Shown: in pieces, positions 15,947 through 32,807 of the stretch
How positions within the stretch are numbered: position 1 is the first letter of the stretch
Layout: every line of letters begins with the position of its first letter
DNA from: Octopus bimaculoides
Taxonomy: Eukaryota
NCBI RefSeq assembly: GCF_001194135.2
Contig: NC_068985.1
Location: forward strand, 49,331,422-49,366,745
Direction: 5' to 3'
Length of the DNA: 35,324 bases
Made by a program: the position numbers and the translations under genes
The notes under the pieces: generated by a model
Databases searched by the model: none
Told to the model about the DNA's origin: nothing
The model's input: the letters and a program-made list of their open reading frames with translations, nothing else

Positions 15947-16252
15947 GTGAGTGTTTATTGAGCGAAAACACCTAAAGCTCCACAAGGCTCCGGCAGGGGA
16001 TGGTGGCGAACCCTGCTGTACTCTTCCACCACAACTTTCTCTCACTCTTACTTCCTGTTTCTGTTGTGCCTGTAATTCAAAGGGTCAGCCTTGTCACACT
16101 GTGTCACGCTGAATATCCCCGAGAACTACGTTAAGGGTACACGTGTCTGTGGAGTGCTCAGCCACTTGCACGTTAATTTCACGAGCAGGCTGTTCCGTTG
16201 ATCAGATCAACTGTAACGCTCAACGTCGTAAGCGATGGAGTGCCAACAACAA
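15947..16252 (+). mobile_element. tRNA-derived SINE, core type B with tail Y (5' end in gap), (CAA)n tail
   Basis: Near-identical to 28237-28538, 27052-27341 and the reverse complement of 31429-31816. Confidence 0.9.
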
Positions 16253-18299: not shown

Positions 18300-19126
18300 T
18301 AGTAAGTATGAGCCTTATTATTTGAAGGCAAAGTTGACTTTATCAGGATTTGAAATCGGAACAGAGAAATGGAATAAATTACATTAAAGCATTCTGTTTG
18401 ACACTTCGATAATTCTAATGAAGTTAGCTTACTGTTTCTTACATATGTGGTGTTAATAGTAGAGAGGGTAATAATAACAGTACTCTTGAGGGTATGCTGG
18501 CCAACTCAGTTAAATTTTGTTATAAATAGCAGAAATACTGTATTGAATCTGTCTTCAGAAATGAAGTTTATAATAAACTTGGAAAATTAAAAATAATATC
18601 ACAAAAATGGAAATGAATTCTGACAGTTTCTGCCAGCTTTGAATATTGGAATTGCACAAAAAAAGTAAAAACATTTTCTATTTCTGGATCAATATATTCA
18701 GTGTAAATTGTCCTACATAGCTGGAATTCTGAAGAGGAAAAAAACTTGATCTTCTGTCATTGATGAGAATGAAGCTAAATTACTATTCATCAAGAATTTT
18801 AAAAACTTATTTGCATTATTGGATTGATTTGGGGGTTTTACTTTTCTTTCTTTTTTTTTTTTTGGTGAGTTTCCAGATTTTCACATATTTTTAAAAACAA
18901 AAGAAACTATAGAAAGTGTTGAAATCTAAATATTTATATCTAGCTTGCATATATATTTTTTGTATAATAAAGGCTGTACTTAATTACTGGTAACATGTGA
19001 GGAGTTAAGTGATTTCACTTACAACACAAGTGATGAAAATGAATTAAAAAAAACAATTTGGATACTAATATTGTAGACAGATTACTGGTCAAGGTTAATA
19101 TAGCCCTTGAAATATATATATATATA

Positions 19127-19445
19127 TCATCATCATCATCATCATCATCATCGTCGTTTAACGTCCGCTTTCCATGCTAGCATGGGTTGGACGATTAGAC
19201 TGAGGACTGGTGAAACCAGATGGCTACACCAGGTTCCAATCTAATTTGGCAGAGTTTCTACAGCTGGATGGCCTTCCTAACGCCAACCACTCCAAGAGTG
19301 TAGTGGGTGCTTTTATGTGCCACCAGCACGAAGGCCAGTCAGGCGGTACTGGCAGTGGCCACGCTCAAAATGGTGTATTTTACGTGCCACCTGCGCAGGA
19401 GCCAGTCCAGCGGCACTGGCAACGATCTCGCTCGAATGACTTTTC
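19127..19445 (-). mobile_element. Young RTE-LINE 3' UTR/tail copy, continuing into a gap
   Basis: (CAT)n then gtttaacgtccgctttccatgctagcatgggttggacg is the reverse complement of 9100-9140; CpGs retained. Confidence 0.88.
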
Positions 19446-20371: not shown

Positions 20372-21461
20372 GTGAATCCCTAAAACTCGAGAACTACGCA
20401 ACCAATTTCATTCAAATTTTACAGATGCCTTACTTAGGGTTCCAGTTGTGTTTTAGTCAACTAACTGAAACAATCACATTTCGATACTGTAATGACAGAT
20501 ACTTTCAGAGAAAGAGAGAAAGAGAGAGAAAGAGATGTATATGTACACGTATATGCATAGATATATATATATATAGATATAGATCTATATGCATACATGT
20601 ATATGTATACACATGTGTAGATGTATATATATATAGATGTACNNNNNNNNNNNNNNNNNNNNNNNNNNNNNNNNNNNNNNNNNNNNNNNNNNNNNNNNNN
20701 NNNNNNNNNNNNNNNNNNNNNNNNNNNNNNNNNNNNNNNNNNNNNNNNNNNNNNNNNNNNNNNNNNNNNNNNNNNNNNNNNNNNNNNNNNNNNNNNNNNN
20801 NNNNNNNNNNNNNNNNNNNNNNNNNNNNNNNNNNNNNNNNNNNNNNNNNNNNNNNNNNNNNNNNNNNNNNNNNNNNNNNNNNNNNNNNNNNNNNNNNNNN
20901 NNNNNNNNNNNNNNNNNNNNNNNNNNNNNNNNNNNNNNNNNNNNNNNNNNNNNNNNNNNNNNNNNNNNNNNNNNNNNNNNNNNNNNNNNNNNNNNNNNNN
21001 NNNNNNNNNNNNNNNNNNNNNNNNNNNNNNNNNNNNNNNNNNNNNNNNNNNNNNNNNNNNNNNNNNNNNNNNNNNNNNNNNNNNNNNNNTTCAGATATAC
21101 TTACATTGTGATTTCTGCAATGTGGTGCATAAATTGTCAAGTAAATGAGACGCATCTTTACCTCCACTGATTCACTTGCAAAGTGTTGAGTAAAATTATT
21201 TCGTTGCAGACCTCCTTTGGGTCTTTTTATTATCACTACGACACACATAGTCCCCAGTTGGTAACATTGATTTCAAGGCCCTCCTAGATGAGAGACTGGC
21301 ATTCCACTTAATGTCTATGTTCCATGCTGGCATGGATTGGAGAGTTATTAATGTAGAAATATGGTATCGTAGCTACTAACAGTTGAGGGTTGCATAGTCT
21401 AGACGGCGTTTTTAGATTTCATTATTCTCTTAACCCGGGCAAAGCCGGGTATTTCTGCTAG
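20295..21461 (+). mobile_element. Non-autonomous Helitron
   Basis: 5' A|TCtatatatataaaaatgag followed by (GTCT)n and aaccaatttcattcaaatttt. 3' GC hairpin acccgg-gcaaag-ccgggt (21433-21450) 7 nt upstream of CTAG|T (21458-21462). A|T target, no TSD. About 450 bp of the interior is N. Confidence 0.72.
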
Positions 21462-22112
21462 TTATCTATATTTCCCTCTGCATTTCTTTTTGAACGTTAG
21501 AGTCCCTAATTATTTTCAATTACATTTCTGTAAATAATAACTTCTAATATAGGCACACTACCACAAATTGGGGTGGTGTGGGAGTAGTTAATAGTTAATT
21601 AAACCCCCCCCCCCCCGTTTCCCCCACGTACATATCTAGTATATTTATCAGCCTCTAAAGAATGAAAGGTAAAGCTAATCTTGGTACAGTCTGAACTCAG
21701 AACAAAGAGAGACTTAACAAAATACTACAAGACGTTTTGTCTTGTAGTATTCTGATACTCTCTTAATTCTGCTAATCTACAAATCTTAAATAAATGTGCA
21801 TAATTTTTAGACTAGAACTGAATACATGAATATATATTTGTTTCCACAAGGTTCAACATTTTTATTCACAATAAGAGCACAAACTGGAAGGACAGAATGG
21901 ATTGTAAGATATTTAAATAAAAAATATATATATATGTAACTTAGGACAAGAGACATTAGCCACTCTATTTGACATGGTTGATTGAATTTTCATAAAGTGT
22001 AAGGCATGGTAGGAGAGAGATAAAGATAAATCAAAGATGACTCATATTAATTAGACATTAAAAAGTTCAGTCTCATAGTGGAAATGACACAGGATCAGAG
22101 GACACCATACCA

Positions 22113-22202: not shown

Positions 22203-22716
22203 TATGGATTGATGACTAATATATCCACATATTCAAAAACAAACATGATTTTATTTGTGGATATGTGTAAGCACAAGTGGGTACAAAACTTTATAAGTAG
22301 CACCATATATGTATGTATGTATGTATGTGTCAAAACATCTGCATCCGGATCTGCAAATCCTGGACAGGCCTGAATTCCCACAGGAAACATCATGCCAAAT
22401 CATCAGACTTAGAACATTGTGCAGCAGTATCATACCGAACCCTCATTTATCAAAGCAATCAAAGAGTACAATACATATGTTTGTAGTTCTACTTTGCCAA
22501 GGACTTTTCAACCCACAAGTAAATGCATATAGTACACTCTATAAAGTGGTTAGTGAGAAGAAGGACAACCAGTCATAGATGCCAAGACAGAATACTGTGC
22601 ATGAACAATCTGAGAACAAGAGTCCCCAATAAGAAATGAATCAGACTATGACAACCTGTCCAACCCATGGTAAGATGGAATGGCAGACATAAAAGGATGA
22701 TGATGATATGTTGATA

Positions 22717-22894
22717 TAGGCAACGTTGTATAGTTGAGAAATTTGTTTTGCAGCAACATGGTTTGAGGCTTGATTCCATTGTGCAGCACCTTGGATAAGT
22801 GTGTTCTGCTATAAGCCTTGGGCTGACCTGCCTTGTGAATAAAATTTGATTAATGGGAACTGTATGGAAGCCTGTCATGTGTGTGTGTGTGTGT
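22717..22894 (+). mobile_element. 5' part of SINE family C (diverged) ending in (TG)n
   Basis: catggtttgaggcttgattccattgtgcagcaccttggataagtgtgttctgctataagccttgggctgacc aligns with 32840-32930. Confidence 0.78.
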
Positions 22895-22932
22895 GCATAA
22901 ACATGGCTATCACTTACAAGCAAGTATAACTT

Positions 22933-23130
22933 GGTAGTTTGTGTCATGCTCTTGCAAATTGTTGTAGGTGACTTGCAAACAACTCGCACATGCAAGTGCT
23001 ACCAGTCGAGAACTCCGCATACCGGAAGCCAGCAAGTGTATGGGGTAATCGGGAGAGAATGTGTGACATTTCGGGGCCTACCTCTCGACGGCGGTAGTTT
23101 GTGCCATGCTCTTGCAAATTGTTGTAGGTG
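22933..23130. repeat. 38-bp direct repeat x2 (37/38 identical, period 160)
   Basis: ggtagtttgtg(t/c)catgctcttgcaaattgttgtaggtg at 22933-22970 and 23093-23130. Confidence 0.97.
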
Positions 23131-23820
23131 CCAATATATAGAAACCTACAACTGCAAAGCTATATTGCTGTGACCAGACATAAATGCTTTCTCCAGGTCA
23201 GCCTTGACTAAGGCTGTGAAAGCTGGAAGGAGAGAAGACTGCATCAGCAGTCAATTGGTAAGTACTTCAATTAAGTAAACTGGAGCAACATCAAGTGAAG
23301 CGCTTTGCTCATGTACATAACATTCAAGTCCAATAATTGAAATCACATTACAATTGTCAGCCCTAGTCACAAAGCCACATGCACTGTATGTGCTTATGAT
23401 CTGTGCATCATAATCAACACATGCAGCATTAGTTCTACATGCGAGCATGTAGGATGAAAATACCTAGTATGAAAATTGAACAAGGGTTTGTATTAGGAAG
23501 GGCTTGAAAAAGCAATATAGTGAAAATGTCAATTAAACGACATCCTATAATTTAATGAGCATGACAGAAAGAGGGGTCACTATCTTGTACGTAATAACAA
23601 GAAAATAGGAATTCGCAAGACGTCTGTAATAAGTCATAACATATTTATTACTGGAGGTAACGTGTTAACATATAAGGTTAATTGAAGGAAAGGCTTGTAA
23701 CATTACATGAACATATTCCTTTTTGCAATCACGTCTCCAAGTAAGTGAGGTGAATGTACGCGTGAGCGGGCATGTATGTGGTGGCCTGACTCAATGCCGG
23801 TCTAAGACTGGACAGACAAT
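22933..23820 (-). ncRNA. Putative heat-shock-inducible structured non-coding transcript (3' extent unknown)
   Basis: Lies directly downstream of the HSE/TATA/Inr promoter. First AUG gives only a 14-codon ORF (MPAHAYIHLTYLET*); no recognisable long ORF; many hairpins. Transcription is inferred, not shown. Confidence 0.35.
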
Positions 23821-23822
23821 GA
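23817..23822 (-). promoter_or_regulatory. Initiator-like element, predicted TSS at 23820
   Basis: Minus strand TCATTG with the A exactly 30 nt downstream of the first T of the TATA box. Confidence 0.6.
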
Positions 23823-23842
23823 GCGTATTTAGAATGCTTCGC

Positions 23843-23850
23843 TTTATATA
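23843..23850 (-). promoter_or_regulatory. TATA box (TATATAAA)
   Basis: Plus strand tttatata equals minus TATATAAA(G); 38 bp from the HSE, at -30 relative to the Inr. Confidence 0.8.
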
Positions 23851-23887
23851 AGGGATGAACCAGAAGTCCCTGACTTCCATGTCAACC

Positions 23888-23922
23888 GGAAGCTTCTAGA
23901 ATGTTCGAGAACTTTCTAGAAG
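23888..23922. promoter_or_regulatory. Heat-shock element: 7 contiguous perfect alternating nGAAn units
   Basis: gGAAgcTTCtaGAAtgTTCgaGAActTTCtaGAAg; GAA at 23889, 23899, 23909, 23919 and TTC at 23894, 23904, 23914. This is the canonical HSF-binding arrangement. Confidence 0.95.
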
Positions 23923-24273
23923 GTTGAGGGAGATTACTCTCATTAAATCCCTTTTCCGTTTTGCTTTCCTGCTTGACCACCAGGGTTCACAATAGCAAGC
24001 TTAAAAACGATAATGATATAGCTTACAAAAGTTTATAGTTTCTTGAAGAATGTGAATGTGTGGGTGTGTGTGTATGATGAAAACGGTGAGTCTAGTGAAA
24101 GTATTATTTCATTTGAGAACACATTAGTAGCCTTAACATGTTTCCCTGAACAAGTAACCCCAGGTGGGTATATTATTACTTAAAATTATTATCAGTTAAG
24201 CTATGATATGTAATCTTTGCAGATTTCACTCTGCTTGAAAAGTAGTAAACACACACCCACACACACGCATGCA

Positions 24274-26519: not shown

Positions 26520-28236
26520 ATAGCATGACATGGTATGTAAGGGGCGTTTGCTGAGATTATATATGAGGTGGTGTATGGTGTATATTTTGGGGTATGCTTG
26601 GTAAGTACTGTGAGATATGTATGGCATTTATCTGGGTATATCTAGGTATGCATGGTATGTTATCTGAGGTATGCATAATATGTTATCTGTAGCATGATAG
26701 TATNNNNNNNNNNNNNNNNNNNNNNNNNNNNNNNNNNNNNNNNNNNNNNNNNNNNNNNNNNNNNNNNNNNNNNNNNNNNNNNNNNNNNNNNNNNNNNNNN
26801 NNNNNNNNNNNNNNNNNNNNNNNNNNNNNNNNNNNNNNNNNNNNNNNNNNNNNNNNNNNNNNNNNNNNNNNNNNNNNNNNNNNNNNNNNNNNNNNNNNNN
26901 NNNNNNNNNNNNNNNNNNNNNNNNNNNNNNNNNNNNNNNNNNNNNNNNNNNNNNNNNNNNNNNNNNNNNNNNNNNNNNNNNNNNNNNNNNNNNNNNNNNN
27001 NNNNNNNNNNNNNNNNNNNNNNNNNNNNNNNNNNNNNNNNNNNNNNNNNNNAGCAAAAACACCTAAAGCTCCACGAGGCTCCGGCAGGGGATGGTGGTGA
27101 ACCCTGCTGTACATTTCACCACAACTTTCTCTCTCACTCTTACTTCCTGTTTCTGTTGTGCCTATAATTCAAAGGGTCAGCCTTGTCACACTGTGTCACG
27201 CTGAATATCCCTGAGAACTACGTTACGGGTACACATGTCTGTGGAGTGCTCAGCCACTTGCATGTTAATTTCACGAGCAGGCTGTTCCGTTGATCGGATC
27301 AACTGGAACCCTCGACGTCGTAAGCGATGGAGTGCCAACACATGTATGGGACGTTACCTGGAGTATGATGATATGTTAGCTGGAGTATGATTGCATGTTA
27401 TCCTGGGGTGTGTATGGAATGTTTTCCATCAAGGACTGGATGGTTTACAACAGCATGACCCCGTGACCCTGCTATGCATGACAGAGAACAGAGATAGCTT
27501 GACTGCAAAATCATCTAGAGTGGCACCCCCCCCCCCCNNNNNNNNNNNNNNNNNCTCGAATGACTGGCTGCACCAGTGAAGAGTACTTGATGATGATGAT
27601 GATGAGGATGATGATGATGACAGGGGTGCTGGTATGTTATTCTGGATATTTATGGAATGTATAACACCTAGGTTGTGTATGGTGTGTTATCTGGGGTATA
27701 TAATAATCCAAGCCAGATAGAAGCAACATGATGTGATACAGTTCACTTAGAGATAACAAAGACTTAGAGGTGAAGCAAGTGACAAAAGATGTTTTGTTAA
27801 CTATTGTTGCTGTTGTTGTTGCAGTGGTGGTGGTGGTGGTAATGGTATGGTGGTGGTGATGGTAATGGTGGTGNNNNNNNNNNTATGAGGTGGTGTATGG
27901 TGTATATTTTGGGGTATGCTTGGTAAGTACTGTGAGATATGTATGGCATTTATCTGGGTATATCTAGGTATGCATGGTATGTTATCTGAGGTATGCATAA
28001 TATGTTATCTGTAGCATGATAGTATGTTATTTGGGGTGTGATGGTATGTCATCCGAAGTCATCATCATCAGCATCAGCATCATTTAACATCCGTTGTCCA
28101 TACTGGTACGGTGTATGGTATATTATCTGGGATAAGTATGGTATATTTAGAGTATGTATGACATATTACCTGGGAGTATGTAGGGCTTGTTATTTTGGAT
28201 ATGCATTGTATGTTACCTGGGGTATGTATGGGACGT
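26520..28236. repeat. Degenerate ~21-22-bp minisatellite (consensus approx. ggtatgttatctggggtatgtat), interrupted by SINEs, gaps and GGT tracts
   Basis: Variants recur throughout 26520-26703, 27342-27430, 27630-27700 and 27884-28236. Confidence 0.75.
27052..27341 (+). mobile_element. SINE core B/tail Y (5' end in gap)
   Basis: Identical to 28332-28538 over the overlap; followed by ATGTATGGGACGTT (27342-27355). Confidence 0.92.
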
Positions 28237-28538
28237 TGTGGAGGCACAATGGCCCAGTGGTTAGGGCAGCGTACTCACGGTCATAGGATCGCAGTTTTGA
28301 TTCCCAGACCGGGCGTTGTGAGTGTTTATTGAGCAAAAACACCTAAAGCTCCACGAGGCTCCGGCAGGGGATGGTGGTGAACCCTGCTGTACATTTCACC
28401 ACAACTTTCTCTCTCACTCTTACTTCCTGTTTCTGTTGTGCCTATAATTCAAAGGGTCAGCCTTGTCACACTGTGTCACGCTGAATATCCCTGAGAACTA
28501 CGTTACGGGTACACATGTCTGTGGAGTGCTCAGCCACT
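28237..28538 (+). mobile_element. SINE head/core B/tail Y (3' end in gap)
   Basis: A box TGGCCCAGTGG, B-box-like GTTTTGATTCC; preceded by ATGTATGGGACGTT (28224-28237). Confidence 0.92.
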
Positions 28539-31428: not shown

Positions 31429-31816
31429 TGTTGGCACTCCGTCGGTTACAACGACGAGGGTTTCAGTTGATCCGATCAACGGAACAGCTTGCTTGTGAAA
31501 TTATCGTGCAAGTGGCTGAGCACTCCACAGACACGTGTACCTTTAACATAATTCTCGGGGGAGATGCAGTGTGACACAGAGTGTGACAAGGCTGGCCCTT
31601 TGAAATACAGATACAACAGAAACAGGAAGATAGAGAGAGAGAGAAAGTTGTGGTGAAAGAGTACAGCAGGGTTCGCCACCACCTGCTGCCGGAGACTCAT
31701 GGAGCATTAGGAGTTTTCGCTCAATAAACACTCACAACGCCCGGTCTGGGAATCGAAACCGCGATCTTACAACCACGAGTCTGCTGCCCTAACCACTAGG
31801 CCATTGCACCTCCACA
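31429..31816 (-). mobile_element. Full-length SINE head/core B/tail Y
   Basis: Minus A box TGGCCTAGTGG and B box GGTTTCGATTCC; candidate TSD GCACACACAA at 31419-31428 and 31818-31827 (low complexity). Confidence 0.92.
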
Positions 31817-32306: not shown

Positions 32307-32807
32307 CAACAAGCCAAGTGAGATCCTAGCTGTGGCCTGTACCAGTGTCGCATAACTGGCCCATTTAAGAGTACCCTTCAATCGTTGGGTAATATATTGT
32401 GCTTGAGAAGACCTGTTGAGTCAAGTGAAATTGTTGTTGTTGCCAATGTCAGTAGTGCCTGACTGGTACCCATGCCAGTGGCACATAAACATCACCATCT
32501 GTGTGTGATTGATGCCAGTGCTGCCAGACTGGCTCCCATATCAGTGGCACATAAAAAGCACCATACAAGAGTAGTCAATGCCAATGCCACCTGACTGGCC
32601 CCCATGTTGGTGGCACATAAAAAGCACCCACCACACTCTTGGAGTGGTTGGTGTTAGGAAGGGCATCCAGCTGTAGAAACCTTGCCAGACTAGATTGGAG
32701 CCTGGTGCAGCCTCCTGGTTTGCCAGTCCTCAGTCAAACCATCCAGCCCATACCAGCATAGAAAGCGAATGTTAAACAATGATGATGACGATGATGATGA
32801 TGATGAT
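32307..32807 (+). mobile_element. RTE-LINE 3' UTR copy with three tandem units and (GAT)n tail
   Basis: Colinear with 8685-9150 (aagtgagatc, gaagacctgttgagtcaagt, gagtggttggtgttaggaagggcatccagctgtagaaac). Confidence 0.88.

What the first reader, a model, noticed from the sequence alone, without database searches (positions are those of the whole stretch)
23817..23922. Orphan maximal heat-shock promoter: 7-unit perfect HSE + TATA(-30) + Inr on the minus strand
Seen: gGAAgcTTCtaGAAtgTTCgaGAActTTCtaGAAg, seven uninterrupted inverted pentamers. With 21 fixed bases, a rough composition-based estimate is about 1e-12 per position. TATATAAA follows 38 bp away, with TCA(+1)TTG exactly 30 nt further. 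The area is locally CpG-rich, with ETS-like CCGGAAG (23886) and AP-1 TGACTCA (23787). Established: HSF trimers bind three or more inverted nGAAn units, and long arrays just upstream of a TATA box mark strongly inducible chaperone promoters such as Drosophila hsp83. Inference: this is a functional HSF1 target promoter in otherwise repeat-filled DNA, with no hsp coding sequence visible in the 23.8 kb downstream.
Basis: partly seen in the sequence, partly recalled or inferred. Interest (0 to 1): 0.9.

Follow-up and report, generated by a model that had tools for sequence, protein, structure and literature searches.

The report
Heat-shock promoter inside a repeated element
The perfect seven-unit heat-shock element with its TATA box is real, but it is not a lone gene promoter: it sits inside a 479-base mobile-element copy, most likely a solo retrotransposon LTR, present roughly 100-200 times in this genome and in two sister species, and this copy shows no transcription in the RNA data available.

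Summary
The sequence is as described. There are seven uninterrupted inverted nGAAn units at 23888-23922. On the minus strand TATATAAA lies at 23850-23843 and TCA(+1)TTG has its A at 23820. Chance does not explain the array (about 1e-12 per position; none in 100 shuffles).

It is not an orphan single-copy promoter. DNA runs show single-copy depth in the flanks, but 40-200 times that depth across 23516-23994, in this species and two relatives. The element is 479 bp with sharp ends and is flanked by a 4-bp duplication (GCAA). Read on the minus strand it runs TG-start, HSE array, TATA, Inr, AATAAA, end. That is the U3-R-U5 layout of an LTR.

The HSE array is the family consensus, not a peculiarity of this copy. 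One transcribed paralogue has a polypurine tract just upstream of the element. No matching primer-binding site was found, so "LTR" is probable, not proven.

The insertion is shared by all three species. This copy shows no reads in three deep RNA runs and no copy-specific words in about 15 others. No chaperone coding sequence lies downstream.

Transposon-borne HSEs are known (ONSEN, Caenorhabditis Helitrons). This is a new member of a known kind. Heat inducibility is untested.

The parts
23516..23994 (-). Whole repeated element, 479 bp, read as a solo LTR. The minus strand starts TATTGTGAACC (family consensus TGTAGTGAACC) and ends TTTTCACTATA.
   Evidence: DNA contig depth jumps from single-copy (13.7/26.6/23.9/6.65) to hundreds or thousands between about 23516 and 23990 in four runs of three species. 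Loose ends beyond both termini are random, apart from a family 'TACA' at 23991-23994. There is no second copy in the window.
23512..23515 (.). Left copy of the putative 4-bp target-site duplication GCAA
   Evidence: Read directly from the sequence. A 4-bp match could be chance, given a few bases of freedom in placing the boundary.
23995..23998 (.). Right copy of the putative 4-bp target-site duplication GCAA
   Evidence: Read directly from the sequence.
23888..23922 (.). HSE array of seven perfect inverted nGAAn units. It contains a 20-bp internal direct repeat (23889-23905 / 23909-23925).
   Evidence: for the array; (D4, I1) for the internal repeat. Family reads agree with this copy at most core positions.
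23843..23850 (-). TATA box, TATATAAA on the minus strand
23815..23822 (-). Initiator-like TCA(+1)TTGTC with A at 23820; inferred U3/R boundary
   Evidence: No RNA 5' ends were seen, so the start site is inferred only.
23821..23994 (-). Inferred U3 (enhancer/promoter part), 174 nt
   Evidence: Inferred from the order of motifs. This is the high-copy, well-conserved half of the element.
23625..23820 (-). Inferred R. Its CpG-rich first 100 nt is the most diverged part among copies. It contains the AP-1-like TGACTCA (23787-23793).
   Evidence: Depth is only 5-20 times single-copy at 23716-23843 at the 80% threshold. CpG o/e is 0.96.
23644..23649 (-). AATAAA polyadenylation signal, 171 nt downstream of the putative start. 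It is followed by a CA about 19 nt on and a T/GT-rich stretch.
   Evidence: read from the sequence. No polyadenylated reads were observed.
23516..23624 (-). Inferred U5
   Evidence: Inferred; high-copy region.

Best explanation
The HSE-TATA-Inr module is the internal promoter of a mobile element, not of a host gene. Positions 23516-23994 are one old copy of a 479-bp interspersed repeat. It is most likely a solo LTR of an LTR retrotransposon, left after recombination between the two LTRs of an inserted element. Read on the minus strand, U3 carries a seven-unit HSF-binding array 37 nt upstream of a TATA box. Transcription would start at the Inr (23820). R carries AATAAA, and U5 ends the element. 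In the active parent element, heat-activated HSF trimers bound to the array would drive element transcription, the strategy used by ONSEN in Arabidopsis. This copy entered before the three sampled species split. It has kept the array by descent, which is no more than neutral decay would allow, and it is silent in the RNA data available. Shown: the repeat nature, copy number, boundaries, shared insertion, motif order, and the absence of a downstream gene or of transcripts. Inferred: LTR identity, the start site, HSF binding and heat inducibility.
For: Copy number: flanks are at single-copy depth while 23524-23715 and 23844-23990 are at 40-200 times that depth in organisms A, B and C. There is still tens-fold excess at >=95% local identity. 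Raw DNA reads pile to 55-75 deep at about 1-2% sampling.
Boundaries: termini are sharp with random flanks. The family end is ...CACTACA and the start TATAGTG, a 6/7 inverted repeat, flanked by GCAA|GCAA.
Motif order on the minus strand is HSE, TATA, Inr, AATAAA.
The array is the family consensus. No majority variant falls inside 23888-23922, and most core positions show under 12% variants.
Contigs of organisms B and C cross the left junction, 23300-23580.
Nearly all RNA reads crossing the 23990 end come from one paralogue. On the element strand its flank reads ...GAGGAGGGAGTTAC|GTAGTG, a polypurine tract next to the element start, as expected for a 3' LTR inside a transcribed full-length element.
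No tRNA or Rfam family was found.
No chaperone motif or Pfam domain was found downstream.
This copy had zero reads in three deep RNA runs at 97% likeness. Its copy-specific words were in none of about 15 RNA-type runs.
Precedents for HSEs carried by transposons: PMC13602373, PMC8376061, PMC6927752, PMC6649756.
Against: No full-length element with two LTRs, gag-pol and a primer-binding site was recovered. Flanks at the U5 end give no consistent PBS. The element ends ...TA rather than the canonical ...CA. The 4-bp duplication rests on this one copy and could be chance (roughly 1 in 50, allowing for boundary freedom). Family-level RNA covers U3 and R-U5 alike, in both mate orientations, with no pile-up of starts at the Inr. 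There is therefore no direct evidence of promoter use. None of the RNA runs is known to be from heat-shocked animals. HSE core positions are no better conserved among copies than the rest of the element (5/21 against 23/114 variable, p=0.77).
Confidence: 0.6

Rival explanations
1. It is a repeated mobile element, but not an LTR. It would be a non-autonomous DNA transposon (MITE-like, with 7-bp terminal inverted repeats and a 4-bp target duplication) or another short composite element that happens to carry a captured heat-shock promoter.
For: Short terminal inverted repeat TATAGTG/CACTACA and a 4-bp duplication. Most copies have random flanks on both sides and no PBS consensus was found. There are about 100-200 short copies of uniform length.
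Against: The ordered TATA, Inr, AATAAA layout on one strand fits an LTR. A polypurine tract abuts the element start in the transcribed paralogue, and similar flanks recur in DNA reads. TGT...start termini with 4-bp duplications are typical of Ty3/gypsy-type LTRs (my own knowledge).
Confidence: 0.25
2. One reading: a functional, unique HSF1-driven host promoter for an unannotated gene or non-coding RNA on the minus strand. Alternatively, this particular copy has been co-opted as such a promoter.
For: The array, the TATA at -30 and the Inr spacing are perfect in this copy. High CpG o/e (0.81 against 0.28) could mean an unmethylated, active region. The insertion is retained in three species. No heat-shock RNA data could be examined, so inducible use is not excluded.
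Against: The module is the inside of a repeat of about 100-200 copies. There were no reads on 23100-24010 in three deep RNA runs. Copy-specific words were absent from about 15 RNA-type runs. Exact low-depth contigs run straight across the TATA and start site (23718-23856). There is no ORF, chaperone motif or Pfam domain downstream. At about 5% divergence from the consensus, keeping all 21 core bases has a neutral probability of about 0.3, so retention needs no selection.
Confidence: 0.07
3. The HSE-like array has no HSF function. It would be a by-product of tandem duplication of a 10/20-bp palindromic unit (TTCTAGAA) inside the element, carried along passively.
For: A 20-bp internal direct repeat and overlapping palindromes. 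Some copies carry extra inserted units after 23892. Core triplets are not better conserved than the rest of the element. No expression evidence links the family to heat.
Against: Duplicating a unit preserves whatever it already was. A contiguous run of inverted nGAAn at exact 5-bp phase placed 37 nt upstream of a TATA box is the canonical architecture of HSF-driven promoters (established knowledge). Spacer positions vary more than cores (8/14 against 5/21, p=0.075), though register shifts in alignment could also cause this.
Confidence: 0.2

Closest known systems
ONSEN (ATCOPIA78) LTRs of Arabidopsis, heat-activated through HSEs bound by HsfA2 (PMC13602373, PMC8376061)
   Same: A retrotransposon-type terminal repeat that carries heat-shock elements in its promoter part. 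It is multi-copy, and copies can be silent under normal conditions.
   Different: ONSEN is a plant Ty1/copia element with proven heat activation and proven full-length copies. Here the host is an animal, the superfamily is unknown, LTR status is inferred and heat response is untested. The array here is longer and more regular (7 perfect units) than the ONSEN HSEs described.
HSE-bearing Helitrons of Caenorhabditis (PMC6927752)
   Same: A transposon family that spreads many HSF-binding sites through an animal genome and can rewire the heat-shock response.
   Different: Helitrons have 5'-TC...CTRR-3' ends, insert without target duplication and carry no TATA-to-polyA layout. This element has TGTAGTG-type inverted termini and a 4-bp duplication, so it is not a Helitron.
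Canonical metazoan heat-shock gene promoters (Drosophila hsp70/hsp83 type)
   Same: Contiguous inverted nGAAn units within about 100 bp upstream of a TATA box and an Inr-like start.
   Different: There is no chaperone gene downstream. The module is repeated about 100-200 times as part of a discrete 479-bp element with its own polyadenylation signal.
Drosophila TE families contributing stress-response transcription factor sites (PMC6649756)
   Same: Animal transposable elements that carry HSF and other stress-factor motifs and sometimes act on neighbouring genes.
   Different: Those are catalogued insertions with functional assays. No neighbouring gene or function is shown here.

Membership tests
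Interspersed repeat / transposable element family | Many dispersed copies with common, sharp boundaries and unrelated flanks | tested here: met
   Depth is 40-200 times single-copy within 23516-23994, flanks are single-copy, and loose ends beyond both termini are random.
LTR of an LTR retrotransposon (solo LTR) | Terminal dinucleotides TG...CA and a short inverted repeat | tested here: inconclusive
   The family start is TGTAGTG (this copy TATTGTG). The end is CACTATA, so it begins with TG but ends in TA. The 7-nt inverted repeat matches 6/7.
LTR of an LTR retrotransposon (solo LTR) | 4-6 bp target-site duplication | tested here: met
   GCAA at 23512-23515 and 23995-23998. This rests on one copy only. 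No empty site is available, because the insertion is shared by all three species.
LTR of an LTR retrotransposon (solo LTR) | U3-R-U5 order on one strand: enhancer/TATA, start site, polyadenylation signal | tested here: met
   HSE 23922-23888, TATA 23850-23843, Inr 23820 and AATAAA 23649-23644 on the minus strand. This is sequence-level only; no mapped 5' or 3' RNA ends.
LTR of an LTR retrotransposon (solo LTR) | Full-length relatives: two direct copies flanking PBS, gag-pol and PPT | tested here: inconclusive
   A PPT-like GAGGAGGGAG lies next to the element start in the one transcribed paralogue, and similar flanks occur in DNA reads. No PBS consensus was found at the other end. There is no second copy in the window. 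The genome could not be searched with these tools.
HSF-dependent heat-shock gene promoter | Three or more contiguous inverted nGAAn units close upstream of the core promoter | tested here: met
   Seven perfect units, 37 nt upstream of the TATA box.
HSF-dependent heat-shock gene promoter | Drives a chaperone or other stress gene downstream | tested here: not met
   No ORF of >=70 aa with chaperone character. No HSP70, HSP90, DnaJ or sHSP signature in any frame. No Pfam domain in minus-strand open segments from 1 to 23900. Caveat: N gaps.
HSF-dependent heat-shock gene promoter | HSF occupancy and heat-induced initiation | not testable with these tools
   Run conditions are coded and none is known to be heat shock. 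Basal transcription of this copy is absent.
SINE | Head derived from tRNA, 7SL or 5S RNA with a pol III promoter, and an A-rich or simple-repeat tail | tested here: not met
   No tRNA, no Rfam match, and no A-rich tail at either end.
Helitron | 5'-TC...CTRR-3' ends, a 3' hairpin, and insertion between A and T without duplication | tested here: not met
   The termini are TATAGTG...CACAATA with a GCAA duplication.

The most novel reading that the evidence does not exclude
A whole family of about 100-200 LTR-like elements, each armed with an unusually long and regular HSF-binding array plus a core promoter, has been kept in at least three related animal species. If the family is truly heat-inducible, it would be an animal counterpart of ONSEN. 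It would also be a dispersed set of heat-responsive promoters or enhancers able to rewire the host heat-shock regulon, as Helitrons do in Caenorhabditis.
Probability: 0.3. Interest if true: 0.55.

Novelty: new member of a known kind. Interest (0 to 1): 0.3.

Why it matters
It removes a false lead: there is no hidden heat-shock gene or unique orphan promoter here. It leaves a modest true lead. A transposon family that carries a textbook HSF-driven promoter would tie element activity to thermal stress. It would also scatter some hundred potential heat-responsive regulatory modules through the genome. This matters for how transposons shape stress regulons in animals, where the known examples are few (Caenorhabditis Helitrons, some Drosophila insertions). 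The practical lesson for scans is that a motif array too perfect for chance can still be ordinary if it is inherited by copying. Copy number should be checked before function is inferred.

Tried and rejected
- A second copy of the element in the window, which would indicate a full-length element, was not found.
- A tRNA- or Rfam-derived origin (SINE, or the hammerhead of Penelope-like or retrozyme elements) gave no match.
- A PBS at the U5 end: four contigs gave ...GGCAGGGTAACCATTT|, which on the element strand looks like TGG 3 nt after the end. A second run of the same species gave a different consensus at 0.56-0.57 agreement, so I rejected it as noise.
- Isolating the orthologous copy in organisms B and C at >=95% likeness, to ask whether the HSE is kept there, failed. 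Short family contigs swamp the region.
- Selection on GAA/TTC cores: they vary less than the spacers (p=0.075) but no less than the rest of the element (p=0.77). Alignment register shifts can explain the spacer excess, so no claim is made.
- Organism identity through an exact-protein look-up of the LINE-like ORF found nothing on record.
It was redone with open segments joined by X.
- An alternative boundary reading (element 23518-23990 with AATA duplication) was rejected. The family consensus keeps TACA/TATA at these positions, so they belong to the element.
- Paper searches for cephalopod or mollusc TE-borne HSEs found nothing relevant.

Full report
**Observation.**
The + strand at 23888-23922 reads GGAAGCTTCTAGAATGTTCGAGAACTTTCTAGAAG, seven uninterrupted alternating GAA/TTC units. 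On the minus strand TATATAAA occupies 23850-23843, with 37 nt between it and the array. TCATTG follows with its A at 23820, 30 nt from the first T of the TATA box. CCGGAAG (23886) and TGACTCA (23787) are present.

The perfect array occurs once in the window, against none in 100 dinucleotide-preserving shuffles. Composition gives 1.3e-12 per position. The region is CpG-rich: o/e is 0.81 for the element and 0.96 for its middle, against 0.28 for the window.

**What it is.**
The decisive result came from laying DNA runs of the same species (X21, X24) and of two related species (X33, X34) on 23300-24240 at 80% likeness.

- The flanks (23300-23491, and 24004 onward) sit at single-copy depth: 13.7, 26.6, 23.9 and 6.65.
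- 23524-23715 and 23844-23990 reach 570-2700 and 1100-2500 in X21, with proportionate values in the other runs.
- That is roughly 40-200 times single-copy depth.
- The middle part, 23716-23843, is at 5-20 times. Some contigs run collinearly through it at about 84% identity, so it is present in other copies but more diverged, as expected for its CpG content.
- At a stricter 95% local likeness the HSE segment is still tens-fold above single copy in all three species.
- Raw DNA reads, sampled at 1-2% of three runs, pile to 55-75 deep.

The HSE-TATA module is therefore the inside of an interspersed repeat with on the order of 100-200 copies. The contig depths behind that figure are crude.

**Boundaries.**
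- Alignments of other copies stop at about 23516 on the left and 23990 on the right.
- Beyond 23990 all runs agree on four more bases (TACA) and then become random.
- Before 23516 the flanks are random, and other copies begin TATAG(T/A)G.
- The family unit is thus TATAGTG...CACTACA, a 6/7 inverted repeat. This copy reads TATAGTG...CACAATA and spans 23516-23994 (479 bp).
- It is flanked on both sides by GCAA (23512-23515 and 23995-23998), a candidate 4-bp target-site duplication.
- No second copy lies in the window.
- Contigs of organisms B and C run from the unique left flank into the element (23300-23580, 3.6-4.6% different). The insertion is therefore shared and predates the split of the three species.

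**Anatomy and mechanism.**
On the minus strand the element reads as follows:

- a TG-type start (family consensus TGTAGTGAACC);
- the seven-unit HSE at 73-107 nt from the start;
- the TATA box, then the Inr at 175 nt;
- a CpG-rich leader;
- AATAAA at 23649-23644, 171 nt downstream of the putative start, followed by a CA about 19 nt on and a T/GT-rich stretch;
- about 110 more nt to the end.

This is the U3-R-U5 layout of a long terminal repeat. With the 4-bp duplication and the TGT-type terminus, it makes a solo LTR the best reading.

Further support comes from RNA. In three deep RNA runs, family-level reads that cross the 23990 end almost all come from one paralogue. Its flank, read on the element strand, is ...CTCATCTGAGGAGGGAGTTAC|GTAGTG. 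That is a polypurine tract next to the element start, as expected for the 3' LTR of a transcribed full-length element. The same paralogue forms a 377-nt contig at depth 366 in run X5. A similar flank shows through in DNA reads.

Against this, I found no primer-binding-site consensus at the other end. The element ends in TA, not CA, and I could not search the genome for full-length copies. I put the LTR reading at about 0.6 and another kind of short mobile element at about 0.25. SINE and Helitron readings fail their defining features.

**The HSE is a family property.**
- No majority variant among copies falls inside 23888-23922.
- This copy differs from the family consensus mainly at decayed CpGs outside the array, at 23880 and 23925.
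- Most core positions carry under 12% variants.
- A 20-bp internal direct repeat (23889-23905 / 23909-23925) shows that the array grew by duplicating a four-unit block.
- Some copies carry extra units inserted after 23892.

Core triplets vary less than spacers (5/21 against 8/14, p=0.075). They vary no less than the rest of the element (23/114, p=0.77), and register shifts can explain the spacer excess. I therefore claim no selection. This copy is about 5% from the consensus, so keeping all 21 core bases has a neutral probability near 0.3.

**Activity.**
- At 97% likeness there are no reads on 23100-24010 in three RNA runs of about 12 million sampled reads each.
- Copy-specific words from 23690-23850 are absent from about 15 RNA-type runs. 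They are present only in two runs of unknown type.
- Exact low-depth contigs cross the TATA box and the start site without a break (23718-23856).
- Family-level RNA covers U3 and R-U5 alike, in both mate orientations, with no pile-up of starts.

There is thus no evidence of promoter use. None of the runs is known to be from heat-shocked animals, so inducibility is open.

**Downstream gene.**
No chaperone-like ORF was found. No HSP70, HSP90, DnaJ, sHSP or HSF signature appears in any frame. No Pfam domain appears in the minus-strand open segments from 1 to 23900. N gaps leave a small loophole.

**Comparison with what is known.**
HSEs carried by transposons are established in several systems:

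- ONSEN LTRs in Arabidopsis (PMC13602373, PMC8376061);
- Helitrons in Caenorhabditis (PMC6927752);
- several Drosophila TE families (PMC6649756).

The present element works like ONSEN on paper: an HSE-armed terminal repeat. It is in an animal, its superfamily is unknown, and its heat response is untested. It is not a Helitron. Searches found nothing on such elements in cephalopods or molluscs.

**Verdict.**
It is a new member of a known kind, of modest interest.

Noticed in passing
window 21200-21500, 22220-22420, 22832-23137: Very high-copy repeats, at hundreds to thousands times the depth of neighbouring sequence in the RNA-type runs. Many contigs join 22330 directly to 22877 (skipping 546 bp), as if a high-copy element here is split by a later 546-bp insertion.
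   Followed up: partly
window 15947-16248, 27052-27340, 28237-28538, 31429-31816 (reverse), 7816-8003: A dispersed repeat family of about 300 bp with five copies in the window at 84-94% identity. It is probably an abundant SINE-like element, though no tRNA or Rfam head was detected.
   Followed up: partly
window 8717-9153, 32359-32795, 19122-19427 (reverse), 5392-5550 (reverse): A second dispersed repeat family of about 440 bp at 75-82% identity. The copy at 32444-32628 contains a 66-bp tandem repeat.
   Followed up: no
window 28332-28538 = 27052-27258 and 27884-28025 = 26562-26703: Blocks that are 100% identical and lie next to N gaps look like assembly duplications in a draft scaffold. The window has 15 N gaps.
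   Followed up: no
window 8432-8647 (+): A 71-aa ORF ending ...RQLRWYGHVLCMDEDSCVRK...GRGRPRRTWDEV resembles the C-terminal tail of non-LTR (LINE) reverse transcriptases, judged from memory. An exact-sequence look-up found no record.
   Followed up: partly
paralogue of window 23842-23990, seen in runs X5, X1, X3, X6-X8: One family copy (variants 23887T, 23906T, 23926A, 23958A) is transcribed and reaches contig depth 366 in run X5, against 3-6 in X1 and X3. The transcript runs from outside the element through the polypurine tract into U3. It appears not to continue into the well-conserved 23546-23700 part, where depth is about 5. The reason is unexplained.
   Followed up: partly
window 23516-23994 against the whole window: CpG o/e of the element is 0.81 against 0.28 for the window, although the insertion is older than the split of three species. 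Either the element is poorly methylated in the germ line, or the window figure is depressed by its many simple repeats.
   Followed up: no
window 24036-24099: A short TG-rich stretch just outside the element is also repeated, at 25-40 times single-copy depth. It attracts many partial RNA reads that join it to 22895-22898, apparently low-complexity cross-matches.
   Followed up: no
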